43,806 nucleotides of DNA from Perkinsus chesapeaki ATCC PRA-425 (taxonomy: Eukaryota > Protista > Perkinsozoa). Position 1 is the stretch's first letter; each line of letters begins with the position of its first letter. The position numbers and the translations under genes were made by a program. The notes beneath the pieces are model-generated. The model made no database searches, was not told the origin of the DNA, and was given only the letters and a program-made list of their open reading frames with translations. The stretch is taken from positions 1 to 43,806 of the forward strand of contig JAAPAO010000278.1 of the NCBI GenBank assembly GCA_013115145.1. Direction: 5' to 3'. Shown piece by piece: positions 941 to 13,200 of this stretch.

Positions 941-1697
941 TTACAGTCGTTGCTTTTGCGTTGCATGAAGCCAGTGAATATATCCGCCCATTCTGCGGCT
1001 GTTATCTCGTGCAGTGTCTGTCCATGTTTGTCTCAAGCGCTCACTCCCTCGTATGCTTGGTGAGACAGTCAGCCATTCCTTAGAGTTGAAACTACTTATC
1101 GAAACACTGCGTAGGTCGAGTATTGTACTCCGAAATGGTGTGCAAGTCACCGAAGGTCATCATCCAACTTGGATGATCCAAGTGCAATACAAAGATATAT
1201 AATTCGTGCTTTATCTGTCTGATCGTCTCGTGGTTGTCATGAATTTCCGAATGTAACTTCGAGTTACTAACTTGGAACTCAAGATATTAAACGAGCAATT
1301 ACATATTTGTGAAATGATGTGAATCAGTCGGTAGACACGACGCTCTAGTGGGTTCCCATTAATCCTGTCCGGCAATGGAGCACGTGCTGTTCCCCTCACA
1401 GATGGTCTTGATCCCGCCTAGCCGTTGCGCAGCTTCCTTCAAGAACTTCTCCAGGGTCGCAGTGTCGACTGTTTCGCTAGAGGTCTCGACGACTTGGATT
1501 TTGACTGCTTTTAGTGTCTCGACTTTGGCGTTGGCTAAGAATTCAGGTACCGTTCGGCACTCCTCGGGGAGATCTTCAGTAGAGACCCCGGCCTCCCGCA
1601 AGATCGCTGGAAGGTCACGAACATCAACCATGCTAGAGTCGCACTCCTTCTCAATGCTCACAAGGCTTTTCTCATCCGCTAGGTTATGCATCGACAT
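941..1697 (-). CDS. Hypothetical multi-exon protein; 3' end uncertain
   Basis: Protein-like ORF 1359-1697 (MSMHNLADEKSL...) plus downstream exon-like segments bounded by GT-AG. No family recognised. Confidence 0.35.
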
Positions 1698-1768: not shown

Positions 1769-3942
1769 TCACGCACTTTCTTGCATTGCATCACTAAGTA
1801 AAATTCTAAAAAGGTCGAAGTTCCGTGCCTGGCCAGAGTCCGAACCGGCAGCATGCTCCAAGGCAATTGGTCGGTTGAAGATGAGTGGCACCGTTTGCTC
1901 ACAACTGGACCCATGAGACCGCAGCCTGGGCACCTGGGAAACAGCCGCCTCGCGCTGGGCGATCCATATGGCGTACTTGGGAAAGGTCGTGATAATCCGG
2001 CGTCTTCCCAAATACAGTTCGATGACCACCGTCCAAGACTAGATCACCCAAGCGGTCAGCAGGCAGTTCGAAAGCAAGTGCTGCTTCATCACGGCGCCGG
2101 ACCTGAAGAGATCAATAGGAACAAGTGAGAGAGTGCAGCAAGGCTTTGCTTAACGTCAATAGACCTTTGACTTTGACATTAAAGGATAAATGTAAAGCAA
2201 GATACCCTTGATATTTCTTAGTCAAGTCAAATGCAGATAGATCAACCCACCTTGAACGGAGCTTCTTCGGACTTGGCCAAATCTTCAAGCACGGCCGTTC
2301 CACTGTCAAGAGACTCGGGTGGTAGATATACAACGGCATACCCTCCCAGTGCACCATGGTGACGGACCTGTCACAAAGAGAATGATAAGGATGGGTATCG
2401 ATAGGGACCCTTACATAGGGGTCTGTTATTGGCAAGATGCATCTTCCTCCTGCCACCCCGTGAGCAGCTAGCTCAGCTTCGATGTACACAACGTTTGGCT
2501 CGAGGCCTGTCGCAGAATCAGTCTGAATAGCATAGGGCATTAGATTGAGGAAGGGAAACAGTGACAGGAACGACCGAGTTAACCGTATTATGGTGAAAGC
2601 CCCTCTGGTAAGCTGACCAGCAAGAACCATTTCGGCTCGTCTAGACTTCAATCCTTTCCCATGTCCCAGGCCGAGGGTCACTTCAAACGACCTACCTTGT
2701 CATTCATACCATGATCAGCTGTTATACCAACAACAACGCCACGGTCATGTAGAGGTCCGAGCCTTTTATCGAGCTCCTTGTAAAAGATGACTGCCTCGTA
2801 GTCGTCTGGTGCATGCTTGTGTTGTACCTTTAAAAAGGGTATATTCTCTAGGCACTGAAATGAAGTGGTCACATAGTCGGTGGTTGAGAAGTACGCCAAG
2901 ACGCGCTTATCAGGCCTCGTGCGTCGCACTAGTTCCAGAAGGCTAATGCCCAGATCGAGCATAAACAGGGACGATTCGGCGGAGTATACACTCGGCACTT
3001 TCTGCCATGAAGTTGTCAGATCTTGAAATGAGGAAATCTCCCCATATGAGAATCTGATTAGGATTAGAGTAGACCAGTAGTCAACAGACGGCATCACTTT
3101 TCCAATGCTGCACACACTGTAGCATCGGCGGCTCGCTCTGCTGAGAGGCCAATCCACCGGTCACCGTTGTCACCAGGTAGACCCGCCGTGAGCATGCTTA
3201 GTAGCTAACAACTTTAGCTGCAATAAATATAACAGGGGCCGCCGCGGCCGTACTTTGTCCTTCACTGTAAGTATCACTGCAACCGTGTCTGGGGCGTTGA
3301 GGAACTCAGAAAATATCGTTGGGCATCGGAGAAGACTGGGTGAAGTCATCATAACCTGGAAAGTATCGTGCGCCAGTTACGAGGGATCCGGTGACCTCTT
3401 CGCCCTTATCAACATCAAAGTAGTAGTTGCCGGCAATGCCGTGGAGAGCTGGAGGAACGCCAGTGATGATGGACATGTTGTTAGGGTTCGTCAGCGTTGG
3501 CATCGCAGAGCGTGCCTCGCCCATGTGACCTTTAGACCTGGCATCTAGCTCTACACGGGAGCTTGTCAGGCTACTCACTCTGTAAGCATCTTTCGATAGA
3601 GATTGGGCATGTGAAACTTAGCATGTTTGAGGTATTCAGGACCACACCCATCAATACATATACCAGCTACGTGTTGACCTGCCTTCGGTAGCTGGTAGAG
3701 GTTGCCATTTACCTAATTCGATCAATGCCTAATTGATTAATTTCACCTACGGAAAGTAAGACCAGCTAAACTTCCCTAAGCACTACTATATGAACCGATG
3801 GACGGCCTGGACGAAAGCTGTGTGGTCAACAGAGTGTCGGGCAGGCAGGCTTACGACTTCGCGATCATCGATTTGGCATCACCTCGAAAGTTCGTGCCGT
3901 TGTCAGGCAACGCCTGGCGATTGTTGCCTGGTGCAGCAGCAT
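1769..3942 (-). CDS. phnA: Phosphonoacetate hydrolase (alkaline phosphatase superfamily), multi-exon, with N-terminal mitochondrial-like presequence
   Basis: The spliced product has the PhnA motifs in order: VNGNLYQLP, ICIDG, MPTLTNPNNMSIITG, TVKDK, PSVYSAE, STTDY|VQHKHAP, ITADHGMNDK, ILPITDPYV, LRSHG..EQTVPLIFNR, RNFDL. First exon MLLHQATIARRCLTTARTFE; intron 3713-3882. Confidence 0.92.
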
Positions 3943-4183
3943 AGGAGGCAGGAGGGAGTAGCCACACTGTCGTGATATTAACATGAGACCAAACTTCCGC
4001 TGATGGGCAATGTTGATGTGGATGAGCTTAGAATTATCCTTGGCACCGTCCCACAAGGAAAACGCAAATTGGAAAAGTAGTCGATGAGAAAAAGCAAGCG
4101 TCATCCACTTTCTAAGTTATATAGGAACCTTCTTGTTCAACTATCTATAGTTCTGCGGTGGCGATAAGGAGCCCAATCCCCGA

Positions 4184-5654
4184 TCAAGGGAAGGGAAGCA
4201 ATGTGGCCTCCACGCCGATTTCCTCACCTGTGACGGAGTAATGGTTAAGATTATAGGCAGAAGCAGCTTACCTAGTTTGGATAGATCTTGCTGGACGTGA
4301 TCGGTTGCTGCATCCTCACCCACGGGAATGGCTATGGTCAAAGTCGTATCGAAAACGTCATACCTGGTAGCCGGAAAGAACGGCTTGAACAGTTTAATGT
4401 TCAGATATCAGCTGCTGCCAGCCATCACACGACGCGCAGCATTAGTATTGCATTAGTCCAGAAGCTTACCCAATATGAGAGCCCGGCACAACTTCTGACT
4501 TAAGATCGAGTATGTTGATTTCTTTACGCTGTAGATACCTAAAGTAGTTTACTTATGAAAGGGTCCGCGAAACTCTTCAACGCCGTTAGCGTAAGGCAGG
4601 CCTACACACGTCGATCGATTGACATGAATATCACGAGTAGCGTAGAGCAGATGCCAGTCGATAAGCACTCCATTAGAAGTGAAAAGGGGGGCACACCTCA
4701 TCATCACAGGTTAAGCTGCCCGCACTAAGTCTCAAAACGGAACACAGAAGTAGGTTTGGCCTACTCGCAAAGGCGTCCAAGAATGTTATAGTCGTCCGGT
4801 CCACAAATCCTAAGTTGTCTGGTTATTGTAGGCGCTGAGAAACACCGTGCTCCTCACTAACACTCGGAGGCTCACCTCCAGCCTGTTGAGTGACAATCTC
4901 CCCAGCAGTCGGTTTGACGCCCACAAGATAACTGAAACGACCACGGTAAGTATGGTAGTGGCAGAAATTGAAATGGGAGCCGAAAGTGTTGAGATGGTCG
5001 TATTTAAAAAGCACATCGGCAGTAGAGGGTCTGATTTTACTCAGGAAAGGTACTGTTAAGTCTCTCCTTGAGCTCGTCCACTCGCTCAGATTGAAGATGT
5101 ACCTAACGTGAGATATTTTTGGCGAGTGCGTGATATTCGACGACGATAAAAAAGGCATATTGAGAGACAAGCCGGTTTAGCTTAGTGGTAGAGCGTCAGT
5201 CTTGTAAACTGAAGGTCGGCGGTTCGATCCCGCCATCCGGCTAATTTGTCGTTCAGTAAGTTGTCAAAATACACGCTCACTAGCCAGTGGTCCCTGACGC
5301 ATAGCGTTACCTCTGCCATGACTGTGAAGTCCTGTCCTAAAATGGTCATGCGTGTACGGCCCAGGTTGCCCTCAACAGGGGTGATGCAGTTTTTGCACAA
5401 GTCATGGACTAAGCCAATTCTATTGGAACCTGACACATCGCTGAGCGCAGCTGTCTCTCTGGAAGGTCAGAGGAGAAAGCAACTCTCAGAACATGTTCTA
5501 TCGTACGACTTACTATCGCCTCACCTGAGACACATACAATGACTGAATCGAAGGGGTTGATGGTATCAGAAGTCATGCGTCTGACGCTTATCCCCCCGAA
5601 AAGGCTCTGGATGGGACGCACGGAGAAAAATCGACGACCAGTGATGAGTGACAT
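4184..5654 (-). CDS. Tandem ACT-domain protein resembling bacterial GcvR, with mitochondrial-like presequence
   Basis: Spliced product: VIVCVSGSNRIGLVHDL..GNLGRTRMTILGQDFTVMAE|VHLQSERVDELKERL (ACT1) and RQLRICGPDDYNILGRLCE|YLQRKEINILDLKSE..FDTTLTIAIP..QQDLSKLG|EEIGVEATLLPFP* (ACT2). Collinear with E. coli GcvR as I recall it. Confidence 0.72.
5171..5242 (+). tRNA. tRNA-Thr(UGU), nested antisense in intron 5103-5310 of the ACT gene
   Basis: Cloverleaf: D arm GCTT/GAGC, anticodon stem TCAGT/ACTGA with loop CT-TGT-AA, T loop TTCGATC. One U6-U67 mismatch in the acceptor stem. Confidence 0.93.
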
Positions 5655-5783: not shown

Positions 5784-7223
5784 TCAATTAATGGGGGTGT
5801 TCTCGTTACTAGACTTTATCGTAGGAGGACCAGTTGAAAGCCATCTCTTACGTATCTGCACCAGGGATGTCGTTTTGCCAACTCTACTTCTTACCCCATT
5901 CACCCATTCCCCTTCGTAGGTAATTCCCGAAGCCGTAGTGAAGGAGCCTCGCCCGTGCTGCTTTCCTCCAACCCATTGCCCTCGGTAAACTCGGCCATTC
6001 GGCCATTTGAACGTCCCAACTCCTGAGTTCATGAATATTCAAATAATGAAGGGTCCCTCACCTTGGCGAAGGTCATCTGCGTGCTCTCCTTCGTAGAGTC
6101 TACCGTCTGGCCAACTATACTTACCTTTGCCATGCATGCGATTGGCCTTCCAACTTCCTCGATATCTGATGGCACAGGCCCATTGTGCAGGAACTGCACT
6201 ACAAATGCGCGAAGATAGTTAAAGACAACACAGAGTTATGCAAAAGCCCAGTTCACAAGCCTCTGAGCATACGGAGATGAACACAAAGCATTCTTACTGT
6301 ACCATCCTTTTGCTCACATTCTCCCGTCTGGCCAACGGAATTCGCCCTGCCCTTCGACATCGTTCTTGTAGAACTCTCCCCAGTAACAGGAATCATCCTT
6401 CCAAGTAAAACAACCAATACCGTGCTTCTTTCCGTCAACGTAGCTGAGAAAAATCTAAATGACCCGATTCTGTGGGCCAAGAGAACTAAGCCTTCTTAGC
6501 TTAGTTGGTAGAGCACCCGCTTAGTAAGCGGGAGGTCGTCGGTTCGACTCCGGCAGAAGGCTTATGCTATTGCTCGCGTGTGCTGAAGTACCTTCCTGAA
6601 TACCGTGACCCATCTGCCCACTTCTCTTCACCATCGCCATGTTTCAGGTCTCTGATCCAGCTACCTCTGTATCTGACGGAAGCCTTCCTATAACATAATA
6701 TCTGCAGGCCAATGCCGAGTTCACAATAATCCATGAAGTGACCACGCGCAACCACGACCAAAACTTTCCTGTAAGCTCAGGGGAGGGGCCCCGATCATCG
6801 AATGACCGCTAGACCCTGAGCCTCACCTCACCTGCTACGTTTACACTTGTAAGTCCCTCGCCCGTTTGCCCTCCCACCAGCCCACTGGCCTTCATAATAA
6901 TCACCGTTCCTGAGCTTATGGGAGTCAAGTCACACTGGGAGGAGGATGCAGGTATTGGTGACTTACGGATATTGTAGTCGACCCCAACCATGTTCAACAC
7001 CATTATACACCTGCCCCTCGTAGCATGACCCATCAACATGTTTCAGTTTCCTGAACTCTACCCTGCCCAAGAGTGGATATCACACCAGAGGGGTCTATGG
7101 AGGATAGGAGCGGCCAAGCAGCTCACTGTAACTTGGACGTTTCCACCTCTTTAGGTGATTTGTGGGTGGTTGTACTCTCGTTCTCTGAAACAGCTGTGCA
7201 GATCTCCTACGAATCGGAAACAT
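5784..7223 (-). CDS. MORN-repeat protein, multi-exon
   Basis: Repeated YxGxWxxGxxHGxG motifs across exons (CYEGQVYNGVEHGWG, YRGSWIRDLKHGDG, YSGS|YVDGKKHGIG, YRGSWKANRMHGKG, YRGQWVGGKQHGRG). Confidence 0.88.
6490..6562 (+). tRNA. tRNA-Thr(AGU), nested antisense in intron 6444-6591 of the MORN gene
   Basis: Acceptor GCCTTCT/AGAAGGC, anticodon stem CCCGC/GCGGG with loop TT-AGT-AA, T loop TTCGACT. Confidence 0.95.
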
Positions 7224-10296: not shown

Positions 10297-13200
10297 TCAC
10301 AATCCATATTCACTGCAAGTACACCGAGAGCTCCGAGAGAGCTCTGAGAGTCGCTGGAGATACCTGATCATCGGAAGCATTAAACGGTAAGACTGCGGCG
10401 GCAGCAGTCCTACTTGACGCATGACATCCTCGGGTACATTAGCCGACACAAACCTCTGCAACTCCATGACCCTGTCCCGAATAACGTCTCTAGAGGCAGC
10501 CTTCTGGGCATGCACCAACAGTGGCACCTGAGGAGGAGGATGTGATGATATTAATAAGGAGATGCCTTCCGACATAAGCGTTAAGGACCCTCCTGGCTAT
10601 AGAAGCCCTGGCTCCTCCGGTCCTCCTATCCCAGTTGGCCCCTAGGAGCTGATGCCTATCAAAGTGCGTAATAGCCTCCTCATATCGTCCACTAGCACAG
10701 AGGCGCTCAAACTGTAGAAGGGAGTATCTACAGCAGCAGCAGCAGCAGAAGATATACTATCCAAGGCACGGGGAAGCCCTACAGTCTCTTGGCTTCATCC
10801 CAGTCCCTCATGTCCAACCCCCATTTCCTAGGATTCGCATCATACACCTTCATAAGCATCTCAATAACAGCCAGCAAGGAGCTGGACGGATCACCTAGTT
10901 GCAGCACCAACATGCCACCTCTACACCACACGAGTGGGCCTACTGATCTCTTGGACGAGGGCCGGCGATGTCAAGCATCTCACCATTACTGTCACAACCT
11001 CATTATACCTACAAACGGTGAAAGCATGATGGGTAACTCTAGCAAGTTGCTGCCTACTCTCCAGCACAGTGCAGTAGCTTCATGCCTAGGCCATGCTGTC
11101 CCATATCCACGGCACATCGACCACAGTATCGGCAGGTCTCTACATAGACAGACTGCTGTTGGTGTTGTTTGACGGTGGGAGCCGATGTCCGGGCAGATGT
11201 CGTTGGTAAAGCTAAGGCGGCGGCCGAAGTGCCGCCGAACGTTGACTGGCGACCAGAGCCGGAGCCTGAAAAACCATGCAATGCAATAACGCTGTAATCT
11301 TGAGGAAGAGTCACCATTGGCGATGGCAGCGGCGGCCGTGGAGTTCTCCTTGGCCGAACTGCTGCTGCTACTGCTGCTCGAGGAGCCCGTCGGACCTGAG
11401 GCCGCCTTCTCATCCATAACACTTGCCAATGCTGAGCTGTGCAGCAGGCCACGGTGAACTTCTCCGGTATCGGGGTCTATGAATCTGAACAACAACAAAA
11501 AGAAGAGCGCGGTATAAGAAGTCTAGAGGTGTGAGCATCTCACCCGACAATCTCATCGATAACCTCTCCATTAGTATTAGACTCAGCATGGCTCAACAAC
11601 AGCTCACGCAGCACCCCTACGCGACAACGAGGCTTTAAGGCAGGTAGGAACCTGATAACATAGGAGGCATTAAGGCAGTATTGGAGTCGTGTGATGATAA
11701 TAGTAATAATAATACGTAACAGTGATGGGGTAGGACGTTACTATCTTGGCGATACTAAGATAACCTCCTCTTTAATACCGATTCTAAAACAAATGCTCGG
11801 GGGCGTCTCGGGCCCCAGACCAATCGGGTAGCACATCTGCTGCATCATTAAAAACTTTGTTGAAAGAATGTTGCCTGTTCAATAAAGTGCCAGTGTTCTA
11901 AATTGTTTTTAATAAATTTCCCGGGCGGGCAATTCGGCGAGCAAGCTCTGAGCCTAGCTGCGAGCTAGTAGCTGGTAAGATATACCTGAGGGTTTCCTGT
12001 AGAGTGAACCTCTTTTGAGCATAATGCATCACTGCTGTAGCCGCGGCACTATCAGACTCCCCCTCCTCTTCAAGATGAGATGATCTTAATGCTGTTATAA
12101 TACCGCTGCCATGAGGCCGATCGATATACTGAGAAAAAGAGGAGAACCACTAGGTGGACAAGCAAATAAACATTATGGGGTGAGACTCGATCCCGAGTGT
12201 ACCACCTCACTGAATCTAAAACTGAATGTGAACCACGCGATGAAGAGGCCCCGGAAAAGGAAACAAGAAAAGAGCGACCAGTAATCTAAATCCTATTTAC
12301 AGTGTAAATTTTACACACACCCGCGCCGCACACCCCTGAAATGCAGCGGTTTCACACATACGAACTTCAGTACCACATACTAAATCATACACATTTATAC
12401 TGCTGCCGCAGACCCAACTTCTCCTGCTGTTTGCGACAGGTGGAAATGATGCTGTCACGAGACGGACTGGAACTAGTGACATATGCCTGGAACGGTTAAT
12501 TGATTTTATGACTTTATCTTCATGCCCTGCCACAAAAATTGTCACCGTTAAATGACCTTTCTTAGCGCGCTACAAGTATATCAGCCTGCATTCGCTGATA
12601 CTAGTGTCGATGGGGGAAGTAGGATCATTAACAAACAGGGGTCACTATCTACTGCACCAATGCAGCGGCACCCACGGCACCAGCCTTCTCACCAATCTCA
12701 TCCATATCGCCGTGGTCTCCTGTGCCTCCGACCCACCACTGAGCACAGCGAAGGCGCGAGGGAATTGAAGTGATAGTAGAAGGAGCTGAACAGGAACAGT
12801 GTACCTATATATACACCACCTCATCAACAGCTTACCTTGGCCAACTTCCAACTAGCATTTAGGCCACCCTTCGACCGACCAGCTGTCCTCCTCTGCTGGG
12901 GATACACTGGACCTGATATCAACATGTAGCGGCTAAGCTCAGCCATACCATTACCAGCATCGCCCAGAGCCATAGGAGCCGTTGTTGTTGTTGCTGCCCC
13001 ACCGCTGGGGCCTACAGTGCCGGCGTCTAGAGGCTCGTCAAAGTACTCCGAGGGGAGATTGGCTATCTTGTCTTGTACTAACTGCAGCTTAGTGAGAGTC
13101 TCTACTGTAGAGAAGCTAGGATGGAGACACTCCATCAGATTGAACCTAACATCGTCTAGTTGAAGAATAATACCGACCCCTCGACTCGAGCCAATGCCAA

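What the first reader, a model, noticed from the sequence alone, without database searches (positions are those of the whole stretch)
1769..3942. Spliced eukaryotic phosphonoacetate hydrolase (PhnA) with a mitochondrial-type presequence
Seen: an intron-containing gene keeping the PhnA nucleophile Thr (TLTNPN) and metal-ligand motifs (CIDG, TTDYVQH, TADHG, RSHG). A separate first exon, MLLHQATIARRCLTTARTFE, is Arg/Ala/Thr-rich with no acidic residue until the last position. Known: bacterial PhnA cleaves the C-P bond of phosphonoacetate to acetate + Pi as the last step of the PhnW-PhnY-PhnA 2-aminoethylphosphonate pathway, and bivalves are rich in aminoethylphosphonate lipids. Inference: a mollusc-infecting protist may break down host or self phosphonates in the mitochondrion for Pi and acetate.
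Basis: partly seen in the sequence, partly recalled or inferred. Interest (0 to 1): 0.75.

Follow-up and report, generated by a model that had tools for sequence, protein, structure and literature searches.

The report
Spliced PhnA gene in Perkinsus
This is a real, selectively maintained 11-exon gene of the clam parasite Perkinsus chesapeaki for a phosphonoacetate-hydrolase-type enzyme (it cuts a carbon-phosphorus bond) with a short, basic, mitochondrial-looking leader; sister species and several other protists have the same gene, so it is solid but not unique to this parasite.

Summary
Exons 2-10 have exactly the lengths of the annotated P. olseni ortholog, and P. marinus has the gene too. 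UniProt already auto-names both "phosphonoacetate hydrolase".

All 12 metal-binding, nucleophile and substrate residues of Sinorhizobium meliloti PhnA are kept. Non-synonymous change is low against saturated synonymous change. The Perkinsus proteins are divergent: the P. olseni ortholog scores 333.6 bits against TIGR02335, below the 407.55 cutoff.

The leader sits in a separate first exon. It is basic, acid-free until its last residue, and poorly conserved in sequence. Similar leaders occur on homologs from Amoebidium, Sphaerothecum and other eukaryote-derived sequences, but not on bacterial ones. This supports mitochondrial targeting without proving it.

- A simple amphipathicity test was uninformative.
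- No RNA data were available.
- The family tree is unresolved at its base.
- PhnW, PhnY and PepM could not be searched genome-wide.
- The link to mollusc hosts is not specific.

Verdict: a new member of a known enzyme family, with a plausible, untested mitochondrial location.

The parts
3883..3984 (-). Exon 1, 102 nt, the 34-aa leader MLISRQCGYSLLPPMLLHQATIARRCLTTARTFE. The exon ends in phase 0 before a GT donor.
   Evidence: The junction ..F(E/Q)|VNG.. and the exon phase are the same in P. olseni and P. marinus.
3713..3882 (-). Intron 1 (170 nt, GTGATGCC...TTAG). In-frame stops lie directly upstream of exon 2, so the start codon must come from exon 1.
3579..3712 (-). Exon 2 (134 nt), VNGNLY...CIDGCG. 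Holds the alpha-metal ligand Asp41 (numbered from the ATG at 3942; add 14 for the ATG at 3984).
3396..3537 (-). Exon 3 (142 nt), ...AMPTLTNPNN.... The nucleophile Thr81 codon is ACG at 3489-3491.
3254..3355 (-). Exon 4 (102 nt), VMMTSPSLLRCPTIF...TVKDK. Holds the substrate lysines Lys144 and Lys146 (S. meliloti K130 and K132).
   Evidence: The preceding intron 3 is only 40 nt.
3098..3204 (-). Exon 5 (107 nt), cap-domain region.
2873..3053 (-). Exon 6 (181 nt), ...PSVYSAE...YFSTTDY. Holds Tyr205 and the beta-metal ligand Asp241.
2696..2827 (-). Exon 7 (132 nt), VQHKHAP...GITADHGMNDK. Holds His245, Asp280 and His281.
2415..2522 (-). Exon 8 (108 nt), TDSATGLEPNVVYIE...LPITDPY.
   Evidence: The preceding intron 7 (2523-2695, 173 nt) has a second haplotype in DNA contigs.
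2251..2367 (-). Exon 9 (117 nt), VRHHGALGGY.... Holds His325 and His326.
1977..2102 (-). Exon 10 (126 nt), ...FELPADRLGDLVL...HDLSQ.
1769..1933 (-). Exon 11 (165 nt), VPRLRSHGSS...RNFDLFRILL.... Holds the beta-metal ligand His410. The stop codon TGA is at 1769-1771.

Best explanation
A nuclear, intron-rich Perkinsus chesapeaki gene encodes a binuclear-metal hydrolase of the PhnA (phosphonoacetate hydrolase) branch of the alkaline-phosphatase superfamily.

Mechanism, inferred from the bacterial enzymes: two metal ions are held by Asp41/Thr81/Asp280/His281 and by Asp241/His245/His410. They activate Thr81 to attack the phosphorus of phosphonoacetate. Lys144 and Lys146 hold the carboxylate and the leaving group, and the products are acetate and phosphate.

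The protein is made with a 34-aa (or 20-aa) basic, acid-free leader encoded by a separate first exon. That leader most likely sends the protein to the mitochondrion. There, phosphonoacetate could arise from 2-aminoethylphosphonate through a transaminase and an aldehyde dehydrogenase.

Shown here: the gene structure, conservation across three Perkinsus species, intact catalytic residues, purifying selection, and the leader's composition and its recurrence in other eukaryotes. Inferred: the substrate, the location, and the source of the substrate. My odds are about 0.85 for a PhnA-type C-P hydrolase and about 0.5 for a mitochondrial location.
For: - **Family match.** Exon pieces hit TIGR02335 collinearly and hit PDB PhnA structures.
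- **Gene model.** The spliced model is uninterrupted with GT-AG introns. Its exon lengths match the annotated P. olseni gene, and the exon 1 / exon 2 junction is the same in P. marinus.
- **Identity.** The model is 42.6% identical to S. meliloti PhnA. All 12 residues listed for that enzyme in PMC7916636 are conserved.
- **Solved structures.** The P. olseni ortholog matches 3szy and 1ei6 end to end at E = 1e-75. The next family, ENPP2, reaches only 1e-8.
- **Profile score.** An ad hoc profile of 38 non-eukaryote-type (presumed bacterial) PhnA sequences scores the P. chesapeaki model at 454 bits.
- **Selection.** Against P. olseni, pN is 0.17 in the enzyme body and pS is 0.78, which is saturated. 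The leader has pN 0.43 but keeps its composition.
- **Leader composition.** It has 4 R/K and no D/E in the first 33 residues. Given the body's acidic content, the chance of that is 0.011.
- **Leader in other eukaryotes.** In eukaryote-derived homologs the metal-ligand Asp sits at median position 46, against 29 in the other 141 sequences. Their leaders are basic and acid-free.
- **Not contamination.** Synteny with both flanking genes holds in three Perkinsus genomes.
Against: - No RNA evidence exists for splicing or for the 5' end. No RNA run holds the locus, and the runs that hold it are DNA.
- The P. olseni ortholog scores 333.6 bits against TIGR02335, below the curated equivalog cutoff of 407.55. 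The P. chesapeaki protein could not be scored directly, so strict functional equivalence is not certified.
- The leader's hydrophobic moment is not above composition-matched shuffles, with p = 0.19-0.6 across the leaders.
- The start codon is ambiguous among ATGs at 4104, 3984 and 3942.
- No PhnW or PhnY lies in the window or in the orthologous loci, and the rest of the genome could not be searched.
- No paper in the held library reports PhnA activity or localisation in any protist.
Confidence: 0.6

Rival explanations
1. It is the same enzyme but cytosolic. On this reading the N-terminal extension is a non-targeting tail or partly 5' UTR, and its basic, acid-free composition is incidental.
For: The amphipathic-helix test does not separate the leaders from shuffles. 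The leader is short. The start codon is uncertain. A few members of the eukaryote-type group have little or no leader: P0122, P0146 and P0287.
Against: An acid-free, basic extension recurs in three Perkinsus species despite high sequence turnover (pN 0.43). It also recurs in at least nine other eukaryote-derived homologs, whereas bacterial proteins start about 17 residues closer to the metal-ligand Asp.
Confidence: 0.25
2. It has the PhnA fold but a shifted substrate. The divergent Perkinsus lineage would act mainly on another phosphonate or on a phosphoester, not on phosphonoacetate.
For: The Perkinsus clade sits on a long stem of 1.24 substitutions per site. The P. olseni ortholog falls below the TIGR02335 equivalog cutoff, 333.6 against 407.55. 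According to PMC7916636, Pseudomonas PhnA accepts other phosphonocarboxylates, phosphonoaldehydes and p-nitrophenyl phosphate at low rates.
Against: All 12 catalytic and substrate-contact residues are kept in all complete eukaryote-type sequences. These include the KDK lysines, which are assigned to the carboxylate and the carbanion.
Confidence: 0.12
3. It is a recent bacterial gene transfer specific to Perkinsus, retained to exploit the phosphonolipids of the bivalve host.
For: The backbone of the careful tree is unresolved. A tree forcing Perkinsus together with the proteobacterial/Penicillium group was not rejected (p-AU 0.74 against the quick tree). Identity to the best bacterial and the best eukaryotic homologs is similar at 43-45%.
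Against: Perkinsus is not nested in any of the three well-supported bacterial groups (support 93/97, 100/97 and 100/99). The gene has 10 introns at positions shared across the genus. Homologs with the same kind of leader exist in unrelated eukaryotes that have other hosts or none.
Confidence: 0.1
4. Translation starts at the upstream in-frame ATG at 4104. That would give a hydrophobic N-terminus (MTLAFSHRLLFQFAFSLW...) followed by the basic region, which is a two-part secretory or relict-plastid leader.
For: In P. chesapeaki the reading frame stays open from 4104 to exon 1's donor.
Against: P. olseni and P. marinus have in-frame stop codons 14 and 17 codons upstream of the Met that aligns with 3984, so the extension is not conserved as coding. 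The upstream gene's last conserved block ends near 4184, only about 80 nt from this ATG.
Confidence: 0.04

Closest known systems
Sinorhizobium meliloti PhnA (PDB 3SZY; phnW-phnA-phnY operon on pSymB) and Pseudomonas fluorescens 23F PhnA (PDB 1EI6)
   Same: Same fold family, with end-to-end alignment. The model is 42.6% identical to S. meliloti PhnA. The nucleophile Thr, both metal sites, the two lysines, the Tyr and the His-His pair are identical.
   Different: The Perkinsus gene is eukaryotic and nuclear, has 10 introns, and carries an N-terminal leader of 20-34 aa. It is not clustered with phnW or phnY. It scores below the TIGR02335 equivalog cutoff by proxy of its ortholog.
Perkinsus olseni KAF4650688.1 (UniProt A0A7J6KU03, auto-named 'Phosphonoacetate hydrolase') and the P. 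marinus ATCC 50983 ortholog
   Same: These are orthologs, with 70-76% amino-acid identity to P. olseni depending on the alignment. A P. chesapeaki / P. marinus figure was not computed; P. olseni and P. marinus are 68% identical. Intron positions, the exon 1 / exon 2 junction and both flanking genes are the same.
   Different: The leader differs in sequence and length (29 against 34 aa). The public P. marinus model has a wrong C-terminus. No P. chesapeaki protein of this family appeared in the protein search.
Eukaryote-derived PhnA homologs: Amoebidium parasiticum and Sphaerothecum destruens (EukProt), an unnamed EukProt protein P0131, P0406 on a eukaryotic metagenome contig, and several transcript-like contigs
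   Same: All catalytic residues are kept. Most have basic, acid-free N-terminal leaders of 14-57 aa. Some pass the TIGR02335 cutoff.
   Different: Identity is only 37-45%. Whether they form one clade with Perkinsus is unresolved.
Fungal phosphonoacetate hydrolase (activity purified from Penicillium, PMC12479703) and the Penicillium canariense HD-PhnA fusion protein
   Same: It is a eukaryotic PhnA-family protein. The fungal PhnA domain scores 546.8 bits against TIGR02335.
   Different: The fungal protein groups with proteobacterial PhnA. It is fused to a PhnZ-like HD oxygenase domain and has no comparable leader.
PhnX phosphonatase gene reported elsewhere in this genome (scan notes s1-218126 and s1-235029)
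   Different: It belongs to an unrelated fold (HAD superfamily) and acts on phosphonoacetaldehyde. I did not examine it.

Membership tests
Phosphonoacetate hydrolase PhnA (TIGR02335; EC 3.11.1.2; alkaline-phosphatase superfamily) | Full-length, collinear match to the family profile and to solved PhnA structures, clearly better than to other alkaline-phosphatase-superfamily branches | tested here: met
   Exon pieces map collinearly onto profile positions 3-404 of 408. The ortholog P0268 matches profile positions 2-405 at E = 1.8e-99 and matches 3szy at E = 1e-75, against ENPP2 at 1e-8. The P. chesapeaki model scores 454 bits against an ad hoc profile of 38 non-eukaryote-type (presumed bacterial) PhnA sequences.
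Phosphonoacetate hydrolase PhnA (TIGR02335; EC 3.11.1.2; alkaline-phosphatase superfamily) | Whole-protein score at or above the curated equivalog cutoff (407.55 bits) | tested here: not met
   The spliced P. chesapeaki protein has no reference and could not be submitted. Its orthologs score 333.6 bits (P. olseni) and 286.7 bits (P. marinus, a truncated model), both below the cutoff. Amoebidium (437.3), P0131 (408.9) and P0156 (417.1) pass.
Phosphonoacetate hydrolase PhnA (TIGR02335; EC 3.11.1.2; alkaline-phosphatase superfamily) | Thr nucleophile in the TNPNN motif, plus the alpha-metal ligands (S. meliloti Asp29, Thr68, Asp250, His251) | tested here: met
   Asp41, Thr81, Asp280 and His281 are conserved. 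The residue list comes from PMC7916636.
Phosphonoacetate hydrolase PhnA (TIGR02335; EC 3.11.1.2; alkaline-phosphatase superfamily) | Beta-metal ligands (S. meliloti Asp211, His215, His377) | tested here: met
   Asp241, His245 and His410 are conserved.
Phosphonoacetate hydrolase PhnA (TIGR02335; EC 3.11.1.2; alkaline-phosphatase superfamily) | PhnA-specific substrate and proton-relay residues (Lys130, Lys132, Tyr181, His294, His295) | tested here: met
   Lys144, Lys146, Tyr205, His325 and His326 are conserved in P. chesapeaki and in all complete eukaryote-type homologs compared.
Phosphonoacetate hydrolase PhnA (TIGR02335; EC 3.11.1.2; alkaline-phosphatase superfamily) | Hydrolysis of phosphonoacetate to acetate and phosphate | not testable with these tools
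   This needs a recombinant enzyme assay.
Phosphonoacetate hydrolase PhnA (TIGR02335; EC 3.11.1.2; alkaline-phosphatase superfamily) | Pathway partners PhnW and PhnY encoded by the same genome (adjacent in most bacteria) | tested here: inconclusive
   tblastn with S. meliloti PhnW and PhnY found nothing in the 43.8-kb window or in the P. olseni and P. marinus loci.
Matrix-targeting mitochondrial presequence | An N-terminal extension beyond the conserved domain that bacterial homologs lack | tested here: met
   The conserved domain starts at VNG, the first residues of exon 2. The metal-ligand Asp lies at position 55 (counted from ATG 3984) against a median of 29 in 141 other sequences.
Matrix-targeting mitochondrial presequence | Net positive charge, rich in Arg/Ser/Thr/Ala/Leu, and essentially free of acidic residues | tested here: met
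   The leader has 4 R/K, 6 S/T and no D/E in its first 33 residues, with chance probability 0.011. The P. olseni and P. marinus leaders are the same in this respect.
Matrix-targeting mitochondrial presequence | Ability to form an amphipathic helix | tested here: inconclusive
   The maximum 11-residue hydrophobic moment is 0.64. That is not above composition-matched shuffles (p = 0.19-0.25), and the test is equally uninformative for the other eukaryotic leaders.
Matrix-targeting mitochondrial presequence | A processing-peptidase motif (Arg at -2 or -3) near the end of the leader | tested here: inconclusive
   Judged by eye. P. marinus RGF|AT fits the R-3 pattern. The aligned P. olseni RAV|TT and P. 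chesapeaki RCL|TT only approximate it. No predictor was available.
Matrix-targeting mitochondrial presequence | Demonstrated import or localisation | not testable with these tools
   This needs a GFP fusion, organelle proteomics or an import assay.

The most novel reading that the evidence does not exclude
Perkinsus PhnA may belong to an undescribed, eukaryote-wide lineage of PhnA enzymes that are imported into mitochondria. The lineage would also include ichthyosporeans and several unnamed marine protists. If so, the last C-P-cleaving step of 2-aminoethylphosphonate breakdown, and perhaps the whole route including the PhnX noted elsewhere in this genome, takes place in the mitochondrion. There it would yield phosphate and acetate directly for acetyl-CoA synthesis. 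This would give a concrete enzymatic handle on phosphonate catabolism in eukaryotes, which a 2023 review calls 'even more cryptic' than in prokaryotes (PMC10574752).
Probability: 0.35. Interest if true: 0.6.

Novelty: new member of a known kind. Interest (0 to 1): 0.4.

Why it matters
Phosphonate breakdown has been worked out almost entirely in bacteria. For eukaryotes there are only scattered activity reports in fungi and doubts about whether dinoflagellate PhnW-PhnX is used.

A conserved, selectively maintained PhnA gene with intact catalytic residues in all three sequenced Perkinsus species shows that these parasites very likely cleave a C-P bond themselves. Basic leaders on homologs from other protists suggest a shared organellar location.

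Bivalve tissues are rich in ceramide aminoethylphosphonate. The enzyme could therefore feed the parasite phosphate and acetate from host lipids, which is testable with recombinant protein and 31P-NMR.

The limits: the gene is not unique to a mollusc parasite, and UniProt already auto-names the sister-species proteins. The advance is a corrected gene model, the leader comparison, and a sharpened hypothesis, not a new kind of system.

Tried and rejected
1. **RNA support.** Two run searches found no RNA run that holds the locus. The two small runs labelled 'RNA?' laid nothing, and the holders are DNA. Splicing therefore rests on comparative evidence only.
2. **Word-based protein search with a 159-aa exon ORF**. 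It returned only partial bacterial PhnAs at 34-49% identity, because full-length relatives fall outside the length filter. The profile search of representatives then found the Perkinsus and other eukaryotic homologs.
3. **Primary structural papers.** Kim 2011 and Agarwal 2011 are not held. The residue list was taken from the review PMC7916636.
4. **'PhnA' in Arctic microalgae** (PMC9756366). That is the unrelated zinc-ribbon PF03831/YjdM protein, not this enzyme.
5. **Amphipathic-moment test of the leaders.** It was uninformative.
6. **Phylogeny.** FastTree and a quick IQ-TREE search grouped Perkinsus with the eukaryote-derived sequences at SH-aLRT 88-89. A constrained alternative scored better than the quick tree, and the careful search leaves the backbone a polytomy. 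I dropped the claim of a supported eukaryotic clade. No diagnostic insertion or deletion was seen in the C-terminal block, the only region I inspected.
7. **My first pass at intron 3.** I took CAG|GTTATG as the donor, which breaks the frame. The 40-nt intron 3356-3395 (GTCACC...CCAG) restores EEV|MMT..LRCPTIF and matches P. olseni.
8. **Whole-protein TIGR02335 score.** The spliced protein has no sequence reference and I did not paste it, so its score was not obtained.

Full report
**Organism and locus.** Earlier notes of this scan name the genome as Perkinsus chesapeaki. This fits what I found: the closest proteins are from P. olseni (70-76% identity, depending on the alignment) and P. marinus. 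The gene lies on the minus strand.

**Observation.** Separate exon pieces hit NCBIfam TIGR02335 (phosphonoacetate hydrolase) in collinear order. The TLTNPNN exon aligns to the solved PhnA structures 3szy and 1ei6.

I derived a model by hand from the sequence and checked it by script. It has 11 exons:
- 3942(3984)-3883
- 3712-3579
- 3537-3396
- 3355-3254
- 3204-3098
- 3053-2873
- 2827-2696
- 2522-2415
- 2367-2251
- 2102-1977
- 1933-1769

The ten introns are all GT-AG, with lengths 170, 41, 40, 49, 44, 45, 173, 47, 148 and 43 nt.

**Independent support for the splicing.** No RNA run holds the locus, and the runs that hold it are DNA, so I used comparison instead. A profile search with the exon 6-7 piece found a P. 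olseni protein. Its cluster holds the full-length KAF4650688.1, which UniProt A0A7J6KU03 names 'Phosphonoacetate hydrolase'.

Mapping that protein back onto its contig gives 11 exons. Exons 2-10 have exactly the lengths of my model, while the introns differ in length and align at only 33-57% of the longer intron. P. marinus has the same exon 1 / exon 2 junction..FQ|VNG...

Exon 2 has stop codons directly upstream in its frame, so it needs exon 1 for a start codon. Against P. olseni, synonymous sites are saturated (pS 0.78) while pN is 0.17 in the enzyme body. The gene is therefore under purifying selection. Both same-strand neighbours are syntenic in the three species, which rules out bacterial contamination.

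**Start codon.** The sister proteins begin MLIGFSRK... and MPIGLPFK..., and both have in-frame stops 14 and 17 codons upstream. A further in-frame ATG at 4104 is not conserved as coding in the sister species. It lies about 80 nt from the end of the upstream gene. I take 3984 as the most likely start.

**Enzyme identity.** I fetched the S. meliloti phnW-phnA-phnY operon from pSymB. The P. chesapeaki model is 42.6% identical to S. meliloti PhnA over 408 aligned positions.

All twelve residues that PMC7916636 lists for that enzyme are conserved. Numbering is from ATG 3942:

| Role | S. meliloti | P. chesapeaki |
|---|---|---|
| Alpha-metal site | Asp29, Thr68, Asp250, His251 | Asp41, Thr81, Asp280, His281 |
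| Beta-metal site | Asp211, His215, His377 | Asp241, His245, His410 |
| Substrate and proton relay | Lys130, Lys132, Tyr181, His294, His295 | Lys144, Lys146, Tyr205, His325, His326 |

The P. olseni ortholog matches the solved PhnA chains end to end at E = 1e-75, with the next family (ENPP2) at 1e-8. The caveat is that it scores 333.6 bits against TIGR02335, below the equivalog cutoff of 407.55, whereas several other eukaryotic homologs pass. I could not submit the spliced P. chesapeaki protein because it has no reference. An ad hoc profile of 38 non-eukaryote-type (presumed bacterial) sequences gives it 454 bits, slightly above P. olseni's 442. It is a clear PhnA-family member, but a divergent one.

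**The leader.** The 34-aa leader has 4 Arg/Lys, 6 Ser/Thr and no acidic residue in its first 33 positions. Given the body's acidic content, the chance of that is 0.011. The leaders of the three Perkinsus species differ greatly in sequence (pN 0.43) but keep this composition.

Homologs of eukaryotic provenance also carry leaders of 14-57 aa that are basic and almost always acid-free:
- Amoebidium and Sphaerothecum transcripts
- EukProt protein P0131
- P0406, which sits on a 283-kb contig beside dynein and UTP20 genes
- Several transcript-like Logan contigs

In this group the metal-ligand Asp sits at median position 46, against 29 in the other 141 sequences. A hydrophobic-moment test did not separate any of these leaders from composition-matched shuffles, and no dedicated predictor or experiment was available. 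I put mitochondrial targeting at about even odds.

**Origin.** FastTree and a quick IQ-TREE search grouped Perkinsus with the eukaryote-derived sequences. A constrained alternative beat the quick tree. The careful search leaves the backbone unresolved.

What holds up is limited. Perkinsus forms one long-stemmed clade (support 100/100). It lies outside three well-supported bacterial groups. The Penicillium protein, a fusion of a PhnZ-like HD oxygenase with PhnA, groups with proteobacterial PhnA. Whether there is a single eukaryotic PhnA lineage remains open.

**Pathway and host link.** Neither PhnW nor PhnY lies in the window or in the orthologous loci, and I could not search the rest of the genome. 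Scan notes report a PhnX phosphonatase gene elsewhere in this genome, also with a suspected mitochondrial leader. I did not check them.

Because similar genes occur in protists with other lifestyles, the gene is not a mollusc-specific adaptation. It could still serve to use host aminoethylphosphonate lipids.

**Literature.** The held library has no paper linking phosphonoacetate hydrolase to Perkinsus, to mitochondria or to protist genes. Fungal activity is known. A 2023 review calls eukaryotic phosphonate metabolism cryptic. The 'PhnA' of Arctic microalgae is a different protein, PF03831.

**Verdict.** This is a new, divergent member of a known enzyme family that databases already auto-name in sister species. 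The mitochondrial location is plausible but untested, and it may be shared by other eukaryotic homologs.

Noticed in passing
window 2531-2699 (intron 7 of the PhnA gene): DNA contigs of two runs carry a second form in which this stretch is replaced by 149 other letters. Its depth is about equal to that of the window's form. It looks like a heterozygous, 20-nt shorter intron haplotype with the flanking exons kept.
   Followed up: partly
window 1359-1697 (-): A 112-aa ORF starts only 72 nt after the PhnA stop codon on the same strand. It is conserved at 58-63% identity directly downstream of PhnA in P. olseni (L001 6187-6504) and P. marinus (L004 12833-13156). It has no Pfam hit.
   Followed up: partly
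window 4184-5624 (-): The upstream same-strand gene is syntenic with the P. olseni gene at L001 1900-3335, which carries a faint ACT_6 hit. Its last conserved block ends about 200 nt before the PhnA start, so the intergenic spacers on both sides are very short. The tRNA-Thr at 5170-5243 lies within its span.
   Followed up: no
window 3985-4104 (-): An in-frame upstream ATG opens a hydrophobic peptide, MTLAFSHRLLFQFAFSLW..., that runs into the PhnA leader. It is not conserved, because both sister species have stops there.
   Followed up: partly
L004 12557-12756 (P. marinus): The public P. marinus protein model (P0285, 423 aa) reads into intron 10 and loses the His377-equivalent ligand. tblastn places the true last exon at 12607-12756.
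   Followed up: partly
P0174 (Penicillium canariense, 619 aa); P0233 (789 aa): The fungal protein fuses a PhnZ-like HD-domain phosphonate oxygenase (TIGR03276, 159.9 bits) to a full PhnA domain (TIGR02335, 546.8 bits). That puts two different C-P-cleaving chemistries in one polypeptide. P0233 is another long protein with a C-terminal PhnA domain; I did not analyse its N-terminal part.
   Followed up: no
L003 3354-10150 (eukaryotic metagenome contig): The leader-bearing PhnA homolog P0406 sits head-to-head with an acetate/acyl-CoA ligase-family gene. That gene's best hit is 'acetate--CoA ligase' at 414 bits, below the cutoff. An MFS transporter lies next to them. This is a suggestive pairing, since acetate is a PhnA product, but it is a single locus.
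   Followed up: partly
window 5787-6761 (-): ORF pieces carry MORN repeats, so a MORN-repeat protein gene lies further upstream.
   Followed up: no
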